DNA of 64,000 nucleotides from Podarcis liolepis (GCA_965112155.1 OZ218101.1); one strand, 5' to 3'. Counted from the first letter of the stretch, positions 6,135 through 56,930 are shown. Translations and numbers: made by a program. The notes: generated by a model not told the origin, from the letters alone.

Positions 6135-6537
6135 GGGGTTGGGAATTGATTCAAACTGCATTTAAAGAGCAACCTATGCAACTTGCACTTTTCAGAACAA
6201 TGTGTGATTTGAAACAAAGACATCCTGCAAAATTTGCACTTTTCTGAATTTTGCAAAGCATTTCTCCAGTCAAGTCGTATGTGCAAAAAATGCATATCCT
6301 AGAGCAGTTATGGCCAAACTTGGCCCTCTAGCTGTTTTGGGACAACAACTCCCATCATCCCTAGCTAACAGGAACAGTGGTCAGGGATGATGGGAATTGT
6401 AGTCCCAAAACAGCTGGAGGGCCAAGTTTGGCCATCACTGTCCACAAGGACTTCCTTGCCAATGGATGCAGAAATGTGGAGAACTAAACTTCAGGCTGGA
6501 AAAAAACCTAATTGAAATTGACAGATTTGCCAACCTG
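6135..6537 (+). mobile_element. Old AT-rich interspersed repeat (probable DNA-transposon relic) hosting a MITE; related copies at ~55037-55425 and ~62280-62740
   Basis: Shared blocks such as GAAATTGACAGATTTG, TGCAAAATTTGCACTT and GCA.TT(C)TCCA across the three loci. Confidence 0.5.
6305..6440. mobile_element. ~136-bp palindromic hAT-type MITE
   Basis: Long TIRs CAGTTATGGCCAAACTTGGCCCTCTAGCTGTTTTGGGAC / GTCCCAAAACAGCTGGAGGGCCAAGTTTGGCCATCACTG; same family as 21687-21822. Confidence 0.85.
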
Positions 6538-10858: not shown

Positions 10859-11588
10859 CAATCTAGGTGCTGCTCACCCCTGGACTAGGCCACCAGTTAT
10901 CCTTCTCCTAGCTGTTCATGCATTTGCTCACATTCACTCATATCTCTCACTCCTTTCTCCTCCTTTCCTTCCTGTACCATTTCTGCCAAAGAGAGGCTAG
11001 GATAAGAGAGTCCTTGACACTGCTAGGCCTACCACTAGGTGATCTGGCTTGGCTGTCCAGTGCAACATCATTTGCTGATTTTTTTTTTTGTTATGTGCAG
11101 CAGTTTTACTCAACTGTCACCTGGAAAGAGATCTCCAACCCCCCCCCCCAGCTTCAGCTTTCTTAGTGCATTTGCTTGGGAAGAGCAGAAGAGCTGATAT
11201 TAACATGAGGGTGAAGAAGAATTTGCAAAGGCAGTCAAGGGATTGAAGACCCAGATCAGAGAACCAGCCTCCCTGCCACCTTGCCCCCCCCCCAATTCCC
11301 AGAAAGCAGCAGAAACCCAGCAGCTAAGAGGTCAGGTAAGCACAACTGCCCCCCTCACAATCCACTACTGCCTAGAAGTAGGGCTACCATACGTTCGGTG
11401 GGAATTTCTGAAAGGTGGTGCTTTGTCCTGTATCTTAGGCAACCCTACTAGAAGGTGAGAAGCTAGCCATATTGGTGGATTCCAAATTCCTACACTTAGT
11501 TAAAGCCATCTTCCTTGATGGGCAGACCTTACAGATAAAAAGCATTACCAGCACAATTAAGGACAGGTGCCATTCTCCTTGTCTTAGC

Positions 11589-11590
<2 letters not shown>

Positions 11591-11639
<49 letters not shown>
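11591..11639. repeat. (CA)n microsatellite
   Basis: Direct observation. Confidence 0.95.
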
Positions 11640-11641
<2 letters not shown>

Positions 11642-11926
11642 AAAACATCTTGGATGAAAAGGTCAAAATCAGGAAGGAATAGACATCAATACTTCATTAA
11701 TTCATTCCCACAGCAAGCAGCAGATAGACAGGGCACAGAGATTTAGCTCAAAACAAAAGCCTCTCTGTTACAGGGGCTTCGCTTTCTTCCCTTGGCTTCT
11801 TTTCCTTATAATTGTGGAACACTCACTCCTTGAGGCTGCAGCACAGAGGAGCAACACTCTCCTAATTATTGCTGGACAAACATTATTTAGCCCTTCTTGG
11901 GCCACTATGGTTGTACTTCTGCTTGC

Positions 11927-13007
11927 CTCGACACTGTAAATCGTAATGTCCTGTGGACTGTCGTCCTGAAAGTCGGCTGCCCAGATAAATTTGTGCACAT
12001 CCTTTGGCTCCTCCATGATAATATAATAGCAACAATCACAGATAGCAATGACTCTCAAAGTGAACCATTCACAGTGAGACCAGCTGTTAAACAGGGATGT
12101 GTTTTCAGCCCAACTCTATTTATTATTTTCATGGCCATGATCCTACACATTGTCAAAGGGAAACTCCCCACCAGGGTAGAAATCATATATTGAACAGATG
12201 GAAAGCTCTTTAACTTGAGTAGGCTGAAAGCAAAGAGCAAGGTTACCAAAACTTCTGTCCTAGAGCTTCAATATTCTGATGACACCATAGTGTGCGCACA
12301 CTCAGAGGATGACCTCCAAACCATCTAAATTGCTTTGCAGAAGCTTACGAAAAGCTTGGCCTATTGTTCAACATCCCAAAAAGCAAAGTGCTGCACCAAC
12401 AAGCACAAAGCAACCCCTCTGCAGTGCCTCGAGTCCAGCTTAATGGTGTAACATTGGAAAATGTCAATCACTTCTCTACCTGGGCAGCTATCTGTTCACA
12501 AGGGCCAACATTGATGCCAAAATCTAGCATCGCCTGAGCTCTGTGCAGCTTTCTCCTGAATGAAGTGCAGAGTGTTTGAGGACCAGGACATTTGCAGGGA
12601 AACAAAAATGCTTGTTTACAAAGCTATTGTACTACCAACCTTACTGTACGCTTGTGAAACATGGACGACTTATAAACACCATCTCCATCTCCTCGAAAAA
12701 TTCCATCAGCAGTGTCTCCAAAATGTTTTACAGATCACTTGGGAAGACAGTGCGAGTGCTCCAACTGGTGAACAGCCTTTACCAAAGGCGCCTGAACTCA
12801 GGACAAAAGGGACAAATGTGCTAAGAGGAAGGCACATTTGGCAAACTCTCATTTTGATCAGCTCCCACCTGGAAACCTATGTCCCTACTGTGGAAGGATG
12901 TGTGGATCCAGAATTGGCCTCCACAGTCACTTACAGACTCTCTATTAAGACCGTGTTCATGGAAGACAATCATACTCAGCTACGAGTGATCACCAAAGAA
13001 GAAGAAG
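11927..13007 (+). mobile_element. 5'-truncated, degraded RTE-clade LINE (not Bov-B) with an internal deletion
   Basis: RT motifs DTVNR, KQGCVFSPTLF, LQYSDD; downstream YKAIVLPTLLYACETW; C-terminal CPYCGRMCGSRIGLHSHL zinc finger; (GAA)n tail; 12-bp TSD ACTTCTGCTTGC at 11915-11926 and 13008-13019. Confidence 0.88.
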
Positions 13008-13287
13008 ACTTCTGCTTGCTTCCATCTAAGTGGATACAATGTGGTCAGTGTTCTCTAAGGTCTGTCAAAGAATACTTCCTGGTGTGTGGCTTTTACTGTC
13101 ACTGCAGTATTGTGATTTCATAACCTGAATGGGCAATAAGGATCTCCACCCCGAAAGCAGAAGAGAGGGCTGTTACACATACTGATTTAAAATCTAGTCA
13201 ACTCTTTTGTGTGGACTTCAAGTGATAATTATTATGCAACAGAACCCGAACAGTGAAGTTACAAAAGTGATTTCCAGCATCACCCTA

Positions 13288-13532
13288 TGTTTATATATAA
13301 GCTAGCTTATTGTTTGTAAAGTCACTTGCTTTTATGCTTAACAGTTTTTATCTACAGAGTACAGAATACAGAGACCACTGAGGAAGAGCAAGATTGAAAC
13401 ACATTTGGGTCCTATGATACTTTGTGATTTATAATCTGTTGTTAACATTTTGTCAGTTTGTGCTGTTTGTGTTTGGATTCTTTTGCTTTGGAAATAAGTA
13501 GATATATATGGTCTGCTTTTAATTCCATCAGA
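13288..13532 (+). mobile_element. Hammerhead-bearing repeat, copy 1 (Penelope pseudo-LTR / retrozyme-like)
   Basis: Direct repeat of 14758-15000; contains GACCA-CTGAGGA-AGAGCAAGATT-GAAAC-ACATT-TGGGTC. Confidence 0.65.
13373..13411 (+). ncRNA. Decayed minimal type-I hammerhead ribozyme motif
   Basis: CUGANGA (13378-13384) and GAAAC (13396-13400) enclosed by GACC/GGTC; stem II damaged. Confidence 0.5.
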
Positions 13533-14757
13533 ATTAAGTCCAGTTTTGTTCCATAGATGATATTTAGAGGTCAAGGAGCATAGGATTGTAGCCTCAAAAT
13601 TGTTAGGGCAATTTGGAAGCAATTTTGCATGAAATGATTTGCTTGTTTAACACAGTTTGCTTTTAGCTTCAGTGAAAGAATCTGATGCATCTTGTCAAGG
13701 CCCAAGACTACCTTCTTCCCACACTTTTCTTTCTTACACAGAAAACTTTGAATTAAAGCCATGTTTTTCCTTCTTGATGGAAGCTTTGAAGTCAAGTAAT
13801 ATATACATCCCTGCTCTTCTTTTCCCAAATGAATATTCTCTGTTGCCATCTTTGTAGCATGCCACCTGATGAAGCTGTTAAAGTTAATAAAGTTCAAGAA
13901 GCAACTCCTTTGGCCCTTGACAGCTACTGTCAAATGAGTTACATTTCTTTAAAAACAAAAAAAGTACACTGAATTATGGAGAATGTTTGAATCAGGTTCA
14001 CTCCAGCAAAGCTAAAGGGGGAGCCTGTGCATCATAATTTGCTTTTTGAGATGCCTCTATTTTCAGTTGCTGTCACATATGCATAACTGTTATTGGAAGT
14101 CTGTAATAATGACTGGAACCTCTCCACCACAATTATTGATTCAAATTATTGTTTCAGGGGTGGAGAATGTTGAACTTCCCATGACTGCTTTCTTAGCATC
14201 TGGCCAAAATTGCACAGTGGCTAAGGAGACCCATGTATGCCAAAAAAAAATTGTGTGGATGCCACAAATCAAGGCCAAAGTATGTAAGAAGGAGTTGGCA
14301 ATCTGTGACCCTTACAACACCCATCATCCCTGATCATTGGCTATGCTGGCTGGAGGTGATGGAAGTTGTAGTCTGACAGTGTCTGGAGTGACATAGGTTT
14401 CCAACCTTTGATAGAAAATAACCTTTCAGAACCTATGCTGCTCCTTGTACCTTGGAGCTATCTTGTAGGCCACAGAGCCAGGAAGAAAATAGCAGTAAAA
14501 TATACAACAGGGAGGCAGGAATGCTGACCTACCCTCCTCCTAATGAATTAGGAACCAGATCAGAGTCCAGGGACGTACAGTGATGTTTGATGGCTCTCCG
14601 GGCAAACTAACTTAAGATACTTGCTCCATTTGGAAACACATCTCTCAATTTTAAAGATCCCACTTGACTGTGCAATACATGCACATATTTGTATGTGGCA
14701 TTCAAAGGCTGGATAAGTATTCTTGCTAGCAATCCAAATTGGTGATTACTTTTGATT

Positions 14758-15000
14758 TGTATATATAAAAGCTGGCTTATTGTTTGTAAAGTCACACTTT
14801 TATGCCTAACAGTTTTTATCTACATAGTACAGAGACCGCTGAGGAAGACCAAGGTTGAAACACATTGGGGTCCTATGATACTTTGTGATTTATAATCTGT
14901 TCATATTGTTCATATTTTGTCAGTATACGCTGTTTGTGTTTGGGTAGTTTTGTTTTGGAAATAAGTAGAGATATACGGTTTGCTTTTAATTCCATCAGAT
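14758..15000 (+). mobile_element. Hammerhead-bearing repeat, copy 2
   Basis: Roughly 85-90% identical by eye to 13288-13532, with three small indels. Confidence 0.65.
14834..14872 (+). ncRNA. Decayed minimal type-I hammerhead ribozyme motif
   Basis: GACC-G-CTGAGGA-A-GACC-AA-GGTT-GAAAC-ACATT-GG-GGTC: both core boxes, stem II (GACC/GGTT) and stem I (GACC/GGTC) are present. Confidence 0.62.
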
Positions 15001-15161
15001 TGTTTTTATATGCCAAAAGTATGTAGTATATTAGTTTGTAAGGGTTACTTTTTATTGTTGATCCTAATGGAGAAAGAAGAGCTTTGGGTAAAGCAGAACA
15101 TCACACATCACAAACATATCTTGTAGACTATATTTGATATAACACAGTTGGGCTGTATTTA

Positions 15162-15230
15162 GAGTCAATCCACTGGGTTAAGAATTGTATCTGCTCTGGA
15201 GTCAATCCACTGGGTTAAGAATTGTATCTG
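15162..15230. repeat. Exact 32-bp tandem duplication with a 5-bp spacer
   Basis: GAGTCAATCCACTGGGTTAAGAATTGTATCTG at 15162-15193 and 15199-15230. Confidence 0.95.
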
Positions 15231-21686: not shown

Positions 21687-21822
21687 TAGGCATAGGCAGA
21701 CTCGGCCATCCAGATGTTTTGGGACAACAATTCCCATCATCCCTGACCACTGGTCCTGTTAGCTAGAGATCATGGTAGTTGTAGGCCAAAAACATCTGGA
21801 GGGGTGAGTTTGCCTATTCCTG
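21687..21822. mobile_element. ~136-bp palindromic hAT MITE
   Basis: Exact 8-bp TSD TTTTATTG (21679-21686, 21823-21830); inverted arms. More decayed relatives near 14300-14410, 31070-31194, 33565-33685, 34880-35010, 42815-42945 and 56383-56525. Confidence 0.88.
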
Positions 21823-30080: not shown

Positions 30081-31194
30081 ACTCTCAAGCAGAAGGGCAA
30101 GGTGAAAAGGACATCTATTAACTCAAAGCATTGTTTTAAATGATTATTCAAGTAAAAACTCAGGGCTGTGTTTATTTAAGCATGTGACAAACAGAGAAGA
30201 TGACGGATGGTGGATAACCAAACTCTGGAGTAGCTGCAAACCAATTATTTGTATTGTAAATGTCAGAATAATTAAAATATCAATTAATGCTTTTCTAGTT
30301 GAGACAGTCCATCTGTAGTTCATCCATTACATAAGGCACATGTAGTGTCTGTGCTTTGTGTGTAACACAAAGATTTATGTGCACTTTGGAGGAATTATTT
30401 GGGACATGTACGCTCAGAAAAAAAGCCAAAATGTTACCAAGGTAACCCAAATTCTGCAGTACAAAAGAAGGATGAGACTTCTATTTATATGTATTTAGAA
30501 TGTGGGTGTAAAGCAGTTTCACAAAATTGATTCTGCATATTCATGACTTCCCCCTCAACTATATGCACACATACAGAGAGAGACATCAGGCTGTGGTGAC
30601 TGGTAAACGCAAACTGTTACCCACTATGATTGGAAAAAGAAACTTTGGTCTGCAAGAACTCTAAAGAAAATACAATTATAGTTTGACCCCAGCAATCTTC
30701 TGCTATCTAGAACTCCCAAAGTGTGGGGTTCCTGTGTATCATATCAAAATTCAAATAATGTTATCTTCTTCACAGGTGTTGAATAGACTCATCAATTCTG
30801 TCTTATTAGTCATATAGATATTTACTATGTACTTACACATAAATTGATTTATGTATTCTATAGTATACGTATAGTACAGTATACGTATACGTTGCGTAAC
30901 AGAGATTTCTTTCTGCTTCACTTTGCTTGCCAAATGGTGGCACATTAGATTTGTCATCCAAGAGCACCATGAATTCCTTTGTGAATCTCATTCCTGCTTG
31001 GAAACCTGGCGATGGATCGCTAAACCTTGGCTAATGTTGTAGAATTGCAGCCTTAAACGCATATGCCAGCTTTTCCCATCCAGGTGCCCTTAAGACGTTT
31101 TTGGATTGTAACTCCAAACCAGCAAGACCAATGGTCAGGGATGATGGGAGTTGTAGTCCAACAGCTTCTGGAAGACCACAGCCTCCCCACCCAT

Positions 31195-33047: not shown

Positions 33048-36000
33048 GCTGCCATAATCTCCTTCCTTCACCTCAAACCAAATGACTTTTTTAAGCCTTA
33101 CATTTCTTCAAGGGAACTGATTGCCTCAATGTGTCTTCTGAACAAATGATTATGATCAGAGTCCCATGTAATTCAGAAGCTGCTTCCAAAGCTTAATCTA
33201 ATAACTTCTGATTAAGTACTTCCTGCCGGTAAGCCTACTTCTGAAGTAATGTGGCCCTCATTTCGTCGGACAATTAAACACATGCCACACCAACATTGTG
33301 GCACTGGGGCAAGTGTGATTCCATCACATTCAAAATGATTTGTGATTTTTTTTTGTACCTTGCCATGTGCCAGAGGAAACAATGACTAGCATAAGGCAGG
33401 GAAGACCAAAATGTTTGCTCTGAACCAATTCTTACTCATTGAGGTAGTTGATTCTAAGACATAATCCATGTTTCACCAACACTTTCACTTGTGAGGAGAT
33501 GAACAAAGGTTTTCATAGCTTAATAAACCTTTAATATAACATCTCTTTTCTAATGTTGTATGTGAAGGATGGGGAACTTGTCACCCTCCAGTTGTTGTCC
33601 CATGATCACTGGCCATTAGTCATGCTGGCAAGGGCTGATGGGAGTTGTAGTCCAAATGTCTCTAAAGAGTGCTTGGTTGTGGAAGAATGGTATATGCTTT
33701 TAAGGCTGCAATTCTACATCACTAGCCAAGAGGGTTAAGCAATCCATCGGTAGGTTTATAGGCAGAAAAGCTCATGGTGCTGTTGGGTGACAAATCCAAT
33801 GTGTCATCCTTTGGCAAGCAAAGTGAAACAGAAACAAATCTTTATCATGAAACATTAGTATACTATAGATTGTATAAAACAATTTATGTGTAGCCTAAGT
33901 ACATAGTAAATATCTTTATGATTAATAACAAAGAGTCTATGAAACTACTTAACAGCTGTGAAGATAAAACTATTGAATTTTGATGTGATGCTATCAAGAT
34001 ATAGCTGGAGAATTAGGACATGCTATATGGAAAAGTGAAGGAAAGTCAAGGCAGTAAATTTTTCAGCTTGGCTAAATCTCACAAGAAGATTCCCAGACTT
34101 ATAGAACCTTCCCAGTGATGTGCTATGCACACGTCAGCAACAGCATTGCAAGTCTTTGGGAGCCACATTTAGAATCATAGAACTGTAAAGATAGAATGGA
34201 CTGTGAGGGTCATAATTTCAGTGGGATGCAACAACAGGTAAATATGCTTAATATAAACAATCACGGGGATTGACACAAAGTCCTCAAAGCTGCATGCTTG
34301 TGAGTACAACAGCGTGTGAGGATTTCTCCTTTTCCCTTGAGCAAGCAGATGATCAATGCAGGAGGGAAGGGTTTTGTTTTGTTTTTTAAAAAGTCACATC
34401 TTCCTACATAAGTAGAAAGCAGAAAGGTTTCATGAGTATGCAGGGATTGAAGCAGTCAGCTGCTGTACTCACAGATCCTGGATCAGGGTGCCATCTGCCC
34501 ATAGAAGCTGTTCTGGAGAATGCTGGCTATTTCCCCAACCCCATTTCTCAGCAGTCTCTTGTTCGTAATATGAAGGTGTTCCCTGCTTCCAAGCCTGCTT
34601 CCACACATTGATTGGCCATGGATGGATCAGGGCCAGCATGCATTTTAAATCTTTCACATCCATTCCAAAAATTGTAGTATAGCATCAATCTGGCTGTGAA
34701 TAAAATGCCAATAGTCATGATATCGAAAGAGGCAAATCTCATTCCAGTTCCTCTTAAGAGCAATCTGCTGGAAGGGATGATGCATAAAAAGGAACAGGAG
34801 GGATAGGGTTGACTTATGGCTAAACCACAAAGTAGGTTTATGTATTTGTTAAAATATGGGAACAGGCTGCAGTTCTGTAACTCAGGTTTTGCCAACATTG
34901 TTCTTCGCAGATTATGGCGGATCGAACTCCCATGAATCCCAGCCAGCATGACCAAGGGATGATGGAAGTTGCAGTCCAACATCATCTGGTGGGCACCACA
35001 TTGTCTCCCTCTGTAAGACAATGTAAGAATGTAAAGTTAGCAGAAAATAAGCTCTGGATCTAAAGTAAATTATGAATGGTCATATCCATTTAAATGGAAA
35101 AGGTTCAAAAATGAAACTGAAATACTGTATGGTTGGCAACTCATCCAATCATATTCATAATTTCCTAAACCTGTTTATGTCTTGGCAGTATGATCTCAGC
35201 CAAACAAAAACAAAAAACAATCGACATCAATGGTACTGTGTCTAGAGTTATCAGATATCTATTCAGTTGTGTATAATAAAATGTAGAGTTCTTTCCAAGT
35301 TATCTCCATATTAGGTTTGGCAGTATTACAAATCAAGGTAATATAGCATTGGCATCAATCAGATGAATTATGTCTTTCTTTATAGAAATGTGCAGGTGAT
35401 TTATAAGCGGACAAGACCATTTTAGATCACTCAAATATCAAAGTCAACCCCCGATGTTATTAAAATGTTGGATTTGTCTTTGATCATTTTATAGGTTTCC
35501 TCTGATACATGATCACTAAAACTTTCAAGTCTGCTTTGTTGAAGGCATTCTTTATATATTGGTGATGATTTCCTTATCAATTGTCACCAATAAACAAATT
35601 GTGTAAACAGTATACTATAAAAAGTATAGTGGTCTAGCAATGTCCCCATTTATGCAATGAAAAGATTGCTCACAGGGTTTTGCCTCAATACTCCCTGAAT
35701 GACTGGCTTGAATGGGAAAAGTTCAGGGCAGCCAGTGAAGAGGGGCAATTCCATGCACCTGCCCTCCTGACAGTGGATTCACTACCTCTTACGGGAGAGG
35801 AGTTGGGGCCAAGGCAATGGGAATAATAATATTGTGTGGATGCACCAACAGAGCCAATCCACTGTCAGAACACCTGGTGCTTGACTTTGCCCCTCCTGGC
35901 CAGTTGCTATGGCTTCAAGGAAAGAAGGAGCTGAATTGAGCTTGGCTCTCGGCTGTGATGTCAGAGAGGACCCTACACTTCCCTCTCCTCCACTCTCCAC

Positions 36001-42300: not shown

Positions 42301-43916
42301 TATTGTAAAATTAGTGAAATGTATAAACCTGAAAAGCATAAATAAAAAAGAAACTACAATGTGTATCAGAGCTGCACACATCTGTGAAGTAACGAAGCTT
42401 ATACATATTTAAAGGGGAACTTCTAGGGAGGATAGAGTTACTAACCAGGACAGTCTGGGAATTCCTGCCATCCAGGACAACAGAGAAGTACCCAGGACAA
42501 TTAAAAAAAAAACCAACCATTTTTTTCTTACTTAAAAAAGAGTTTTTAGCATTTTAAAGTAAAATGTCATCACCAGGTCAAGTGAATTGAGGACATTCAC
42601 ATGTTTGCTTGGTAGAGAACTCTGAATTATTTTTCTATCTGACAATATTTCAGACAAGGTCTATATTATTGCTCAGGATCTTTTCACATCTTGCAAAACA
42701 ATTGGCCATTCAAGCAGGCAGGAAGTGATGAGAAGCTCAAGAGAAGCTCAAACTGTGAGCAACAAGCTGCTTAGGCCTTTCATTTCCAAATATTAAATAG
42801 AATATAAATTGGGGGGGGGTGACCAGCATCGCTCCAGATGTTGTTGGAGTATAACTCCCATCAACCTCAACCAGCATGGCCAATGACCAGTGATGATGGG
42901 AATTGCAGTCCAATGATATTTGGAAATTCATGGGTTAGCTGCCCTGATCTATAACCTAAATAATAGAAGCTGTTCTGCTGAGATGCTAGGCCAGTTTAGG
43001 GTATTTGAGTTTTCTCTATGTGGAATAGCTTCAAGGATGAGACCTTGTGAAGGGAATAAATCTGGCACAACCCATCCACAAACACTGACATCAATTTGTG
43101 GAAGGAAGGCAGCTGAAAAAATGGACTGCATCATTTATTCCTATTAGCATTTGGGACTCATATCTAAACATCTGCTCTCTTATTGGCCTTGTATTGGAAA
43201 TATGGGTACTGAAGAATAATTTCTGCTAAAATATAATAAGTTAATATTTCAGAGCATAGCCCAATTCACACTGACAATTGTGACCGTTTCTAATAAAATA
43301 TGCTGGATCTCTTCTTGCTAAAATGGCAGAAATAGATCATGTATACTGTCTTGCAATTAAATTCAAAGTTAGTTCAATCTGCTATTATATCATGGGAAAC
43401 TTGCCCTTAAAACTTCCCGGTTTCTGAAAAGAAAACTGCTGCAGCCATCTTCGCTAATGCAGCCCTCATCGAGCAATTTACAGGTGTCAGCATTTTAACT
43501 GATGAGTCACGAGCTTTCAACTTTCAGCCGAAAACATTAACATCTGATAGATGTGTAAGAAATTGCTCTCGCTGTACTTGCCTCATTATTTAAAAATAGA
43601 CTTGAAAAGACTCATCTCCCAATGGGGATGTATCTCATGAACTTCTGAAAGCCTTGGTATTGCTCCCCAAAGCCCAACTTAATATACAGATATTTTCCAT
43701 TTAATTTTCCCCCAATTATAATTATTACCCCCCTTTTTTCTTGTGTAATTTTAAAAGTAATAAGTATCCATGAAACCCATAAAACTGATTAACATGAAAT
43801 GGAAAACAAGGGTGGATATTCAACACTGTACAATAACAAATCAGTAGTTCTGTGTGGACAGATCTAAAGCAATCTGGAAAGACATGCCCATACACCTAGC
43901 AGATCATAATACTGTA

Positions 43917-56360: not shown

Positions 56361-56930
56361 CCATTTCCTGATCTTTCTAGAGCAGGGATGAGGAGCCTGT
56401 TGCCCTCTGGATGTTGCTGTATGACAACTCCCATCATCTCTTACCATTGATCATGTTGGCTGGAGCTAATGGAAATTGGAGTCCAATGAGATATGGAAGG
56501 CCCATTCTCGCTGATTCCCCACTCCTGTTCTAGAGAGTGCCTCAGTTGTATTGCATCCAGGCTGCTGTCTTGGAGATCTCTTAGAAAATTGATTTTCATT
56601 ATGTTAAGGGGGCCAGGTGTTGAAAAATATATTGAAACAAAATATCCTTATTTAGTAAAACAATTGTGGAAGATTGCTGGAGAATTAATATCAAGTTGTA
56701 TCCAGTGTCACAGGCCTGATTGGATAGTGCAGTTTACAGGGGGAGGAGACAATGGCAAATTTCTGTTGTGCAAGCAGAATCCATTCCGCACGCAGAGAGA
56801 CCTAGAAGCATAGCAAATGTAGTTTCCAATTGCTTCTTGGTTCAATGCATATCCCAGTGTTCCTAGTAGCAATAGATTTTCCCAAGCATCTAATGACTGA
56901 TAAGGCCTTCATTCTGAGACCTTCGCAATA

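What the first reader, a model, noticed from the sequence alone, without database searches (positions are those of the whole stretch)
13288..15000. Paired ~245-bp direct repeats each carrying a minimal hammerhead ribozyme: retrozyme- or Penelope-like system
Seen: two same-orientation repeats 1.47 kb apart, each with CTGAGGA...GAAAC enclosed by GACC/GGTC. Reverting three CpG-type transitions gives CUGAGGA-A-GACC-AA-GGUC-GAAAC-GC-GUU, with a perfect stem II and the palindromic AACGCGUU stem III. Established: such minimal type-I hammerheads occur in Penelope-like element pseudo-LTRs and in short metazoan non-LTR retrozymes that make circRNAs, and can cleave as dimers. Inference: this is a non-coding, ribozyme-bearing retroelement family that may be undescribed in lizards. 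No RT or GIY-YIG ORF lies between the repeats. Caveats: stem I is mismatched next to the core, and both copies look inactive as they stand.
Basis: partly seen in the sequence, partly recalled or inferred. Interest (0 to 1): 0.85.

Follow-up and report, generated by a model that had tools for sequence, protein, structure and literature searches.

The report
Decayed Penelope-like hammerhead repeat pair
Two direct repeats of about 250-290 bp, 1.46 kb apart in this lizard genome, are most likely the worn-out terminal repeats of a Penelope-like retroelement; each keeps a mutated, probably dead copy of the small hammerhead ribozyme that such elements are already known to carry, so this is an ordinary relic.

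Summary
A1 (13288-13532) and A2 (14758-14999) are same-strand repeats, 85% identical, and the only copies in the window. Each carries GACC-N-CTGAGGA-A-(4-bp stem, AA loop)-GAAAC-ACATT-(T/G)GGGTCC.

For a Penelope-like element (PLE) origin:
- A CpG-tolerant minimal-hammerhead descriptor hits only these two sites. It gives 0.03 hits per shuffled window.
- Both copies have the extra base between A9 and G10.1 typical of PLE hammerheads, and the same CUGAGGA core as Poseidon_Ac of Anolis.
- The roughly 115 bp upstream of the core in A1 shares a colinear chain of exact blocks (36 nt in all) with the Poseidon_Ac pseudo-LTR. The chance of this is below about 1e-3.

Against a live or new system:
- No Rfam hammerhead match.
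- Neither copy passes a strict descriptor. Stem II is damaged in A1, and helix III is non-palindromic in both.
- The spacer has no RT or GIY-YIG remnant.
- No further genomic copies at 80% likeness or more.
- No RNA reads in a sister species.

PLE hammerheads in Anolis and retrozymes in reptiles are already published. The scan's own unchecked notes list 186 hammerhead findings in this genome.

Verdict: probably (about 0.65) a dead, ORF-less PLE-derived partial tandem. It is a new member of a known kind and of low interest.

The parts
13264..13554 (+). Repeat A1: pseudo-LTR-like repeat. The firm core is 13288-13532; the outer ~20 bp on each side are only weakly alike.
14739..15014 (+). Repeat A2: second copy, same strand. 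The firm core is 14758-14999.
13373..13412 (+). Hammerhead-like relic 1. Helix I 5' strand GACC(A); core CTGAGGA 13378-13384; bulged A 13385; stem II GAGC/GATT with one broken pair; GAAA 13396-13399; helix III remnant CACAT; predicted cleavage site after T13405; helix I 3' strand TGGGTCC.
   Evidence: no Rfam match
14834..14873 (+). Hammerhead-like relic 2. GACC(G); core CTGAGGA 14839-14845; bulged A 14846; stem II GACC/GGTT (4 bp, closed by G.U); GAAA 14857-14860; CACAT; predicted cleavage site after T14866; GGGGTCC.
   Evidence: no Rfam match even in a 71-nt search
13264..13384 (+). Part of A1 upstream of the core that is colinear with the Poseidon_Ac pseudo-LTR. The shared blocks are AAAGTGATT, TCACCCTA, TATATAT (a TATA-like box at 13292-13300), TTGCTT, AGTTTT and CTGAGGA.
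13533..14757 (+). Spacer B (1225 bp). It is single-copy and ORF-less, with no RT or GIY-YIG remnant detectable.
14313..14391 (.). Fragment of an unrelated high-copy short repeat lying in the spacer.

Best explanation
This is the relic of one old insertion of a Penelope-like retroelement derivative with a Poseidon-type pseudo-LTR. The cDNA was copied from slightly more than one unit of a tandem or multimeric template. The pseudo-LTR, its minimal type-I hammerhead and about 130-150 nt downstream of it are therefore present twice (A1, A2), around a 1.2-kb ORF-less interior.

Inferred mechanism when it was alive, by analogy with Poseidon_Ac:
- Transcription starts from the TATA-containing pseudo-LTR and runs through tandem units.
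- The hammerhead processes the transcript, either as a dimer through a palindromic helix III or with help from the PLE protein.
- A PLE RT/GIY-YIG protein supplied in trans nicks AT-rich DNA.
- That protein starts reverse transcription internally, about 110-150 nt past the hammerhead.

Since insertion the two copies have diverged by 15%. They have lost every CpG in the ribozyme region, and A1 also has a broken stem II pair, so both hammerheads are now dead and the locus is silent.

Shown here: the repeats, the motif anatomy, the similarity to the Poseidon_Ac pseudo-LTR, the absence of an ORF, the low copy number and the lack of RNA reads. Inferred: the ancestral CpGs, past ribozyme activity and the mode of mobilisation.
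For: 1. Direct repeats with E=2e-79, same strand, in the A-B-A layout typical of PLE partial tandems (PMC11167929).
2. A CpG-tolerant min-HHR descriptor hits only A1 and A2 in 128 kb of both strands, against 0.03 hits per shuffled window.
3. Features that the core match does not require are present: an unpaired base between A9 and G10.1, and G at 10.1. These are listed as PLE min-HHR hallmarks in PMC4209133.
4. Poseidon_Ac of Anolis has the same CUGAGGA core with one extra base before a 4-bp GC-rich stem II closing pair, followed by GAAACGUC.
5. A1 shares with the 126-nt Poseidon_Ac pseudo-LTR a colinear chain of exact blocks of 9+8+7+6+6 = 36 nt ending at the core. Random 123-126-nt segment pairs from this window reach 36 in 0-0.04% of trials, with a 99th percentile of 26-27.
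6. CpG decay after the duplication is visible. A2 keeps 3 CpGs and A1 has CA or TG at each of them. Window CpG o/e is 0.22.
7. A repeat ending 147-170 nt (core or extended boundary) past the core is on the same scale as the Poseidon_Ac RT start sites at +111-118 plus a 30-40-nt tail.
Against: - No Rfam hammerhead model matches, even at E<=10 in a 71-nt search. Rfam models may not cover loop-less PLE variants.
- Neither copy passes a strict descriptor. The ideal motif needs 3 reversions in A2 and 5 in A1.
- The fold energies of the present sequences are no better than those of shuffles, z from -0.3 to +0.75.
- No RT or GIY-YIG remnant in the spacer.
- No similarity to Poseidon_Ac downstream of the core. 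The tail is GT-rich rather than AC-rich.
- No other genomic copy at 80% likeness or more, so covariation cannot be tested.
- The comparison with Poseidon_Ac was read by eye from the paper's supplement, not made with an aligner.
- The possible 7-bp target duplication (CAAAAGT) has a chance probability of 0.085 and overlaps a block that is homologous to the pseudo-LTR.
Confidence: 0.65

Rival explanations
1. The A-B-A layout comes from a local duplication of about 250-290 bp, or from an unrelated old terminal-repeat element. The hammerhead-like motif and the Poseidon-like blocks are chance resemblances in AT-rich, CpG-depleted DNA.
For: - The repeat is confined to this locus at 80% likeness or more.
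- No Rfam match.
- Fold energies are not special.
- The descriptor was tailored after the fact, and a chance rate of 0.03 per window would give about 14 chance hits over the 473 windows of this genome that carry notes.
- No coding remnant.
Against: - The chance that such a motif falls in a given 245-bp stretch is about 1e-4.
- The independent colinear block chain with the Poseidon_Ac pseudo-LTR lies directly upstream of the core and has p below about 1e-3.
- The PLE-specific bulge after A9 is present.
- LTR features are absent: no PBS starting TGG next to A1, no polypurine tract before A2, no convincing TSD.
Confidence: 0.2
2. A1 and A2 are two independent insertions of a short, ORF-less PLE or retrozyme-type mini-element (a solo unit of about 250-290 bp). 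They landed 1.2 kb apart, for instance through the known preference of PLEs for AT-rich sites near their own copies.
For: - PLE proteins home to AT-rich DNA and to their own pseudo-LTRs.
- Monomeric 'solo retrozymes' are common in vertebrates.
- First-stage notes of this scan, which are unchecked, mention tiny TSD-flanked hammerhead units elsewhere in this genome.
- The spacer shows no PLE-like sequence.
Against: - A1 and A2 are each other's closest relatives, and no third copy reaches 80% likeness genome-wide. For two draws from a dispersed family this is unlikely.
- Neither copy has its own flanking target duplication.
Confidence: 0.12
3. The repeat is the 3' UTR tail of the CR1/L2-like LINE that lies just upstream, present once with its ORF and once as a 5'-truncated copy.
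For: LINE RT and C-terminal ORF pieces run from 11897 to 12945 on the same strand.
Against: The very high-copy LINE signal stops at about 13000-13010, and 13024-13347 is at single-copy depth. The LINE therefore ends about 260-280 bp before A1.
Confidence: 0.01

Closest known systems
Poseidon_Ac (PAc), the Penelope-like element of Anolis carolinensis, with its pseudo-LTR hammerhead (PMC11167929; Repbase consensus in its File S1)
   Same: - Lizard host.
- Direct pseudo-LTR repeats arising from a partial tandem.
- CUGAGGA core with G at N7.
- One unpaired base after A9.
- A GC-rich 4-bp closing part of stem II.
- GAAAC followed by a helix III built on CpG.
- Colinear blocks in the ~115 nt upstream of the core, including a TATA-like run.
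- The repeat ends 147-170 nt (core or extended boundary) past the core.
   Different: - No start codon in the ribozyme and no RT/GIY-YIG ORF.
- The unit is 1.46 kb rather than 2.67 kb.
- Stem II has a 2-nt loop instead of an 11-nt loop.
- Helix III would be ACGCGU rather than ACGU.
- No similarity downstream of the core.
- Old and decayed (15% between the repeats), whereas PAc copies are 99.9% identical.
- Not transcribed in the runs examined.
Metazoan non-LTR retrozymes (PMC7229834; vertebrate survey in bioRxiv 10.64898/2026.07.22.740005)
   Same: ORF-less, carries a type-I hammerhead, related to PLE pseudo-LTRs, has two same-strand ribozymes that could in principle release a unit-length RNA, and is reported in reptiles.
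   Different: Retrozymes are head-to-tail tandem arrays of short units (51-972 bp, on average 176 bp in Reptilia), have many copies and yield circRNAs. This element has 1.2 units of a 1.46-kb period, no family at 80% likeness or more, dead ribozymes and no RNA reads.
PLE minimal hammerheads (min-HHRs) of Cervera and de la Pena 2014 (PMC4209133)
   Same: The core, the bulged base between positions 9 and 10.1, G10.1, a short helix I, and a helix III reduced to a short stretch that would be palindromic if its CpGs were intact.
   Different: As it stands today, 10.1-11.1 is G.U and 15.2-16.2 with loop 3 reads ACACAU, which is not palindromic. No family-level covariation is available.
Plant LTR retrozymes (PMC4918200)
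   Same: A non-coding interior flanked by direct repeats that each carry a hammerhead.
   Different: Plant retrozymes have true LTRs of about 350 bp with type-III hammerheads, a tRNA-Met PBS, a PPT and 4-bp TSDs. None of these features is found here.

Membership tests
PLE minimal type-I hammerhead (min-HHR) | Catalytic core CUGANGA ... GAAA in the right order and spacing | tested here: met
   Both copies have it: 13378-13384 with 13396-13399, and 14839-14845 with 14857-14860.
PLE minimal type-I hammerhead (min-HHR) | Unpaired nucleotide between A9 and G10.1 | tested here: met
   A13385 and A14846 precede G10.1. The feature is listed in PMC4209133.
PLE minimal type-I hammerhead (min-HHR) | Helix II of 4 bp or more, closed by G10.1-C11.1 | tested here: inconclusive
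   A2 has G.U, A-U, C-G, C-G. A1 has G.U, A-U, G x A, C-G. The closing pair is a G.U wobble in both. This fits decay of a CpG at 11.1/G12 but does not prove it.
PLE minimal type-I hammerhead (min-HHR) | Palindromic 15.2-16.2 and loop 3, allowing a dimeric helix III | tested here: not met
   Both copies read A-CACA-U, which is not self-complementary. It becomes palindromic only if two CpA are read as former CpG.
PLE minimal type-I hammerhead (min-HHR) | Helix I of about 4-5 bp next to the cleavage site | tested here: inconclusive
   A1 has 3 contiguous pairs, then a bulge, then 2 pairs. A2 has a 4-bp GACC/GGUC helix set off by a 1 x 2 internal loop next to the core.
PLE minimal type-I hammerhead (min-HHR) | Family of copies showing covariation | not testable with these tools
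   Only two copies are available. None of the four differences between them in the motif is compensatory.
PLE minimal type-I hammerhead (min-HHR) | Self-cleavage | not testable with these tools
   Needs an in vitro transcription assay.
Rfam hammerhead families (Hammerhead_1, _3, _II, HH9, HH10) | Covariance-model score at or near the gathering threshold | tested here: not met
   No hammerhead match at gathering over the window, none at E<=10 in 1.9 kb, and none at E<=10 in 71 nt.
Penelope-like element (canonical, EN+) | ORF with telomerase-like RT and C-terminal GIY-YIG endonuclease | tested here: not met
   Pfam found nothing at E<=10 on ten stop-free spacer pieces. No GIY-YIG or YxDD motif lies between the repeats.
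Penelope-like element (canonical, EN+) | Pseudo-LTRs: same-strand terminal repeats from a partial tandem, with the hammerhead at the pseudo-LTR/body junction | tested here: met
Penelope-like element (canonical, EN+) | Sequence similarity of the repeat to a known PLE pseudo-LTR | tested here: met
   A colinear exact-block chain of 36 nt with the Poseidon_Ac pseudo-LTR. The null gives P(>=36) of 0-0.0004.
Penelope-like element (canonical, EN+) | 3' end at an internal RT start site in an AC-rich stem-loop (the 'tail') | tested here: inconclusive
   The distance from the core, 147-170 nt (core or extended boundary), is on the right scale, but the sequence there is GT-rich, not AC-rich.
Metazoan non-LTR retrozyme | Head-to-tail tandem array of short hammerhead units | tested here: not met
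   Two hammerheads lie 1461 bp apart, with a unique spacer that is not repeated after A2.
Metazoan non-LTR retrozyme | Multi-copy family in the genome | tested here: not met
   Depth over A1 and A2 is about 2-3 times single copy at 80% likeness or more in the contigs of two species, which is what cross-mapping of the two copies gives. More diverged copies cannot be excluded.
Metazoan non-LTR retrozyme | Unit-length linear or circular RNA | tested here: inconclusive
   Zero reads over 13024-14238 and 14401-15100 in two RNA-seq runs of a sister species. About 12% of each run was read, and small or circular RNAs may be lost.
LTR retrotransposon / plant-type LTR retrozyme | TG...CA LTR ends, a PBS after the 5' LTR, a PPT before the 3' LTR, and a 4-6-bp TSD | tested here: not met
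   No TGG-type PBS after 13532-13556 and no purine tract before 14739-14758. The only flank match (CAAAAGT) has a chance probability of 0.085.

The most novel reading that the evidence does not exclude
A is the pseudo-LTR of an uncatalogued, ORF-less 'long-unit' derivative of Poseidon-type PLEs. Its period would be about 1.3-1.46 kb, its hammerhead would have a very short stem II (4 bp, 2-nt loop), and it would be mobilised in trans. This would be an intermediate between autonomous PLEs and the short tandem retrozymes, with other, more diverged copies elsewhere in lizard genomes.
Probability: 0.2. Interest if true: 0.35.

Novelty: new member of a known kind. Interest (0 to 1): 0.2.

Why it matters
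It matters little on its own. It is one more decayed PLE-type hammerhead locus in a genome where such motifs appear to be very common, and lizard PLE hammerheads and reptile retrozymes are already in the literature. Its modest value is as an example of an ORF-less element with a Poseidon-like pseudo-LTR. [quoted passage not shown]

Tried and rejected
1. LINE 3' UTR idea. A CR1/L2-like LINE lies just upstream on the same strand, but the read-depth profile shows it ends at about 13000-13010. Rejected.
2. I spent the one search of protein representatives on the LINE C-terminal piece. It returned mostly zinc-finger proteins and became irrelevant once the LINE idea fell.
3. Rfam, three ways: no hammerhead match.
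4. Strict min-HHR descriptor: no hit anywhere, including the candidates.
5. Thermodynamic folding of the present sequences: no signal.
6. nhmmer and blastn for diverged copies in the window: none.
7. Pfam on stop-free pieces of the spacer, plus GIY-YIG and YxDD motif scans: nothing between the repeats.
8. Target-site duplication. CAAAAGT at 13263-13269 and 15014-15020 has a chance probability of 0.085 and overlaps pseudo-LTR-like sequence. Not used.
9. LTR-element reading: no PBS or PPT.
10. The search of earlier findings by sequence was blank.
11. Left out: a formal alignment of A1 and A2 with the Poseidon_Ac consensus. The comparison was made by eye, with short patterns and with a null that does not need the consensus.
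12. I did not fold or print a CpG-reverted version of the motif.

Full report
**The observation**

The two repeats are real. The repeat finder and blastn align 13288-13532 with 14758-14999 on the same strand. Identity is 85.3% over 251 columns, E=2e-79, and start-to-start spacing is 1461-1470 bp. A MAFFT alignment with flanks shows three indels:
- a 7-nt local duplication in A1;
- a 6-nt local duplication in A2;
- a gap in A2 at the A1 block CACTTGCTTT, shown as 2 columns in MAFFT; the sister-species contig carries CTTG there.

Weak similarity continues about 20 bp further on each side, to about 13264-13554 and 14739-15014. Neither blastn with word 7 nor nhmmer --max finds a third copy in the 64-kb window.

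- A1: GACC-A-CTGAGGA-A-GAGC-AA-GATT-GAAA-CACATT-TGGGTCC, at 13373-13412.
- A2: GACC-G-CTGAGGA-A-GACC-AA-GGTT-GAAA-CACATT-GGGGTCC, at 14834-14873.

A1 has two further non-CpG changes that hit the same stem II pair.

**Is the motif more than chance?**

Rfam gives no hammerhead match. This holds at gathering thresholds over the window, at E<=10 over 13200-15100, and at E<=10 over a 71-nt slice around the A2 motif. Rfam models may not cover loop-less PLE variants, so this counts only moderately against.

My strict min-HHR descriptor requires helix II of 3 or 4 contiguous pairs, helix III C...GUH with CpG tolerance, and helix I of at least 3. It finds nothing in the window, the candidates included. 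A1 fails on stem II and A2 fails on helix I.

I then relaxed the descriptor just enough for both to pass: one mismatch in stem II, and offsets of up to 2 and 1 at helix I. It then hits only these two sites in both strands of the window. It finds 0.03 sites per dinucleotide-shuffled window. That works out to about 1e-4 for a given 245-bp stretch. Over the 473 windows of this genome that carry notes, it would still give about 14 chance hits.

The present-day RNA folds are no more stable than shuffles.

**Context, and a hypothesis of mine that failed**

A 5'-truncated CR1/L2-like LINE lies just upstream on the same strand. Its pieces are:
- an RT piece at 11897-12190, Pfam RVT_1 E=3e-6;
- further ORF pieces up to the C-terminal piece at 12796-12945.

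I suspected the repeat was its 3' UTR. Laying whole-genome contigs of the source species (X1) and a sister species (X10) at 80% likeness or more refuted this. The very high-copy signal (word depth 1e5-1e6) stops at about 13000-13010, and 13024-13347 is at single-copy depth.

The same table gives the copy number of the repeat:

| Run | Single-copy baseline | Bins over A1 | Bins over A2 |
|---|---|---|---|
| X1 | about 31-35 | 31, 59, 38 | 32, 79, 50 |
| X10 | about 6-10 | 13, 17, 15 | 15, 28, 17 |

This is what cross-mapping of A1 and A2 onto each other produces. So there is no family at 80% likeness or more, beyond at most a contig or two.

Both repeats are present at the orthologous locus of the sister species. 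Two RNA-seq runs of that species give zero reads over 13024-14238 and 14401-15100.

The spacer is single-copy apart from a fragment of an unrelated high-copy short repeat at 14313-14391. It has no long ORF. Ten stop-free pieces give no Pfam hit at E<=10. It has no GIY-YIG or YxDD motif.

**What points to a Penelope-like origin**

Cervera and de la Pena (PMC4209133) list features of PLE min-HHRs that their descriptor did not require:
- a conserved G10.1-C11.1 pair;
- a palindromic 15.2-16.2 and loop 3, so that the ribozymes act as dimers.

Here the unpaired base (A13385, A14846) and G10.1 are present. 11.1 is U next to G12, and helix III reads ACACAU. These are exactly the states expected if CpGs at these places had decayed.

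CpG decay since the duplication is visible elsewhere in the repeat. A2 keeps three CpGs and A1 has CA or TG at each of them. Window CpG o/e is 0.22.

The Repbase consensus of Poseidon_Ac from Anolis carolinensis is printed in the supplement of PMC11167929. Across its tandem junction it reads ...CTGAGG|ATGCCT...GGGCGAAACGTC. It therefore has the same CUGAGGA core with G at N7, one extra base after A9, a GC-rich closing part of stem II, and a CpG-based helix III.

Read by eye against that text, the roughly 115 nt of A1 upstream of the core share these blocks with the 126-nt Poseidon_Ac pseudo-LTR, in the same order:

| Block | Poseidon_Ac | Window |
|---|---|---|
| AAAGTGATT | 2559-2567 | 13264-13272 |
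| TCACCCTA | 2596-2603 | 13280-13287 |
| TATATAT | 2617-2623 | 13292-13298 |
| TTGCTT | 2632-2637 | 13326-13331 |
| AGTTTT | 2638-2643 | 13343-13348 |
| CTGAGG core | 2662-2667 | 13378-13384 (CTGAGGA) |

The window coordinates were confirmed with two gapped patterns. The null was the best colinear chain of exact matches of at least 6 nt between random 123-126-nt segments of this window, or between A1 and random segments. Its mean is 11 and its 99th percentile is 26-27, and it reaches 36 in 0-0.04% of trials.

I could not run a formal alignment. This step is left out and the evidence is weaker for it.

Downstream of the core I see no similarity to Poseidon_Ac.

The repeat ends 147-170 nt (core or extended boundary) past the core. 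In Poseidon_Ac, reverse transcription starts internally at +111-118, with a second site 30-40 nt away. The scale fits, but the sequence here is GT-rich rather than AC-rich.

**Most likely reading (about 0.65)**

This is one old insertion of an ORF-less derivative of a Poseidon-type PLE. It was copied from slightly more than one unit of a tandem template, which gives pseudo-LTR + hammerhead + tail, then the interior, then pseudo-LTR + hammerhead + tail again.

The mechanism when it was alive is inferred from Poseidon_Ac:
- a promoter in the pseudo-LTR;
- a dimeric or protein-assisted hammerhead;
- RT and GIY-YIG protein supplied in trans;
- nicking of AT-rich DNA;
- internal initiation of reverse transcription.

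Today both ribozymes are dead and the locus is silent.

**Rivals**

- A local duplication or unrelated terminal-repeat element with chance resemblances (about 0.2).
- Two independent insertions of a solo mini-element (about 0.12). This is disfavoured because A1 and A2 are each other's closest relatives genome-wide.
- The LINE tail (refuted).
- An LTR-element reading fails on the PBS, the PPT and the TSD. The only flank match, CAAAAGT, has a chance probability of 0.085.

**Comparison with what is known, and novelty**

- PLE hammerheads were described in 2014, including in reptiles (PMC4209133).
- The hammerhead of a lizard PLE has been dissected biochemically (PMC11167929).
- A 2026 preprint reports non-LTR retrozymes in 4 of 5 sampled Reptilia and argues that they derive from PLE pseudo-LTRs (10.64898/2026.07.22.740005).
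- The scan's own first-stage notes, which are unchecked, list 186 hammerhead findings in this genome, 76 of them also naming Penelope.

The locus is therefore a new, decayed member of a known kind. It is not a canonical PLE because it has no ORF. It is not a retrozyme as defined, because it has no short tandem units, no family and no RNA. It resembles both.

Noticed in passing
window 11897-13010 (+): A 5'-truncated CR1/L2-like LINE. It has RT pieces (Pfam RVT_1 E=3e-6), frameshifts and a deletion, and a C-terminal CPYCGRMCGSRIGLHSHLQT piece at 12796-12945. Its 3' end is at about 13000-13010. Its last ~300 bp are extremely abundant in the genome (word depth 1e5-1e6 against about 32) and are present in RNA-seq reads of a sister species.
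   Followed up: partly
window 14313-14391, with pieces at 6341-6401, 21727-21784, 31119-31155, 33599-33652, 42829-42900 and 56424-56483: Fragments of a very high-copy short repeat, present in both orientations. The neighbouring sequence in other genomic copies looks palindromic (GGCCCTCCAGATGTTGTTGGACTACA...), as in a MITE. RNA reads fall on both strands.
   Followed up: partly
window 15162-15230: A perfect 32-nt direct duplicate (GAGTCAATCCACTGGGTTAAGAATTGTATCTG) with 37-bp spacing, just downstream of A2.
   Followed up: no
window ~31976 (-): A further LINE reverse-transcriptase motif (NLRYADDTTLMAESEEELKNLL) on the minus strand.
   Followed up: no
window 14796: The sister species (organism F) has CTTG inserted after 14796, so its A2 keeps the CACTTGCTTTT of A1. 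The 4-bp deletion is specific to the lineage of the window's species (table 4).
   Followed up: no
window 11580-11620: A (CA)n microsatellite just upstream of the LINE fragment.
   Followed up: no
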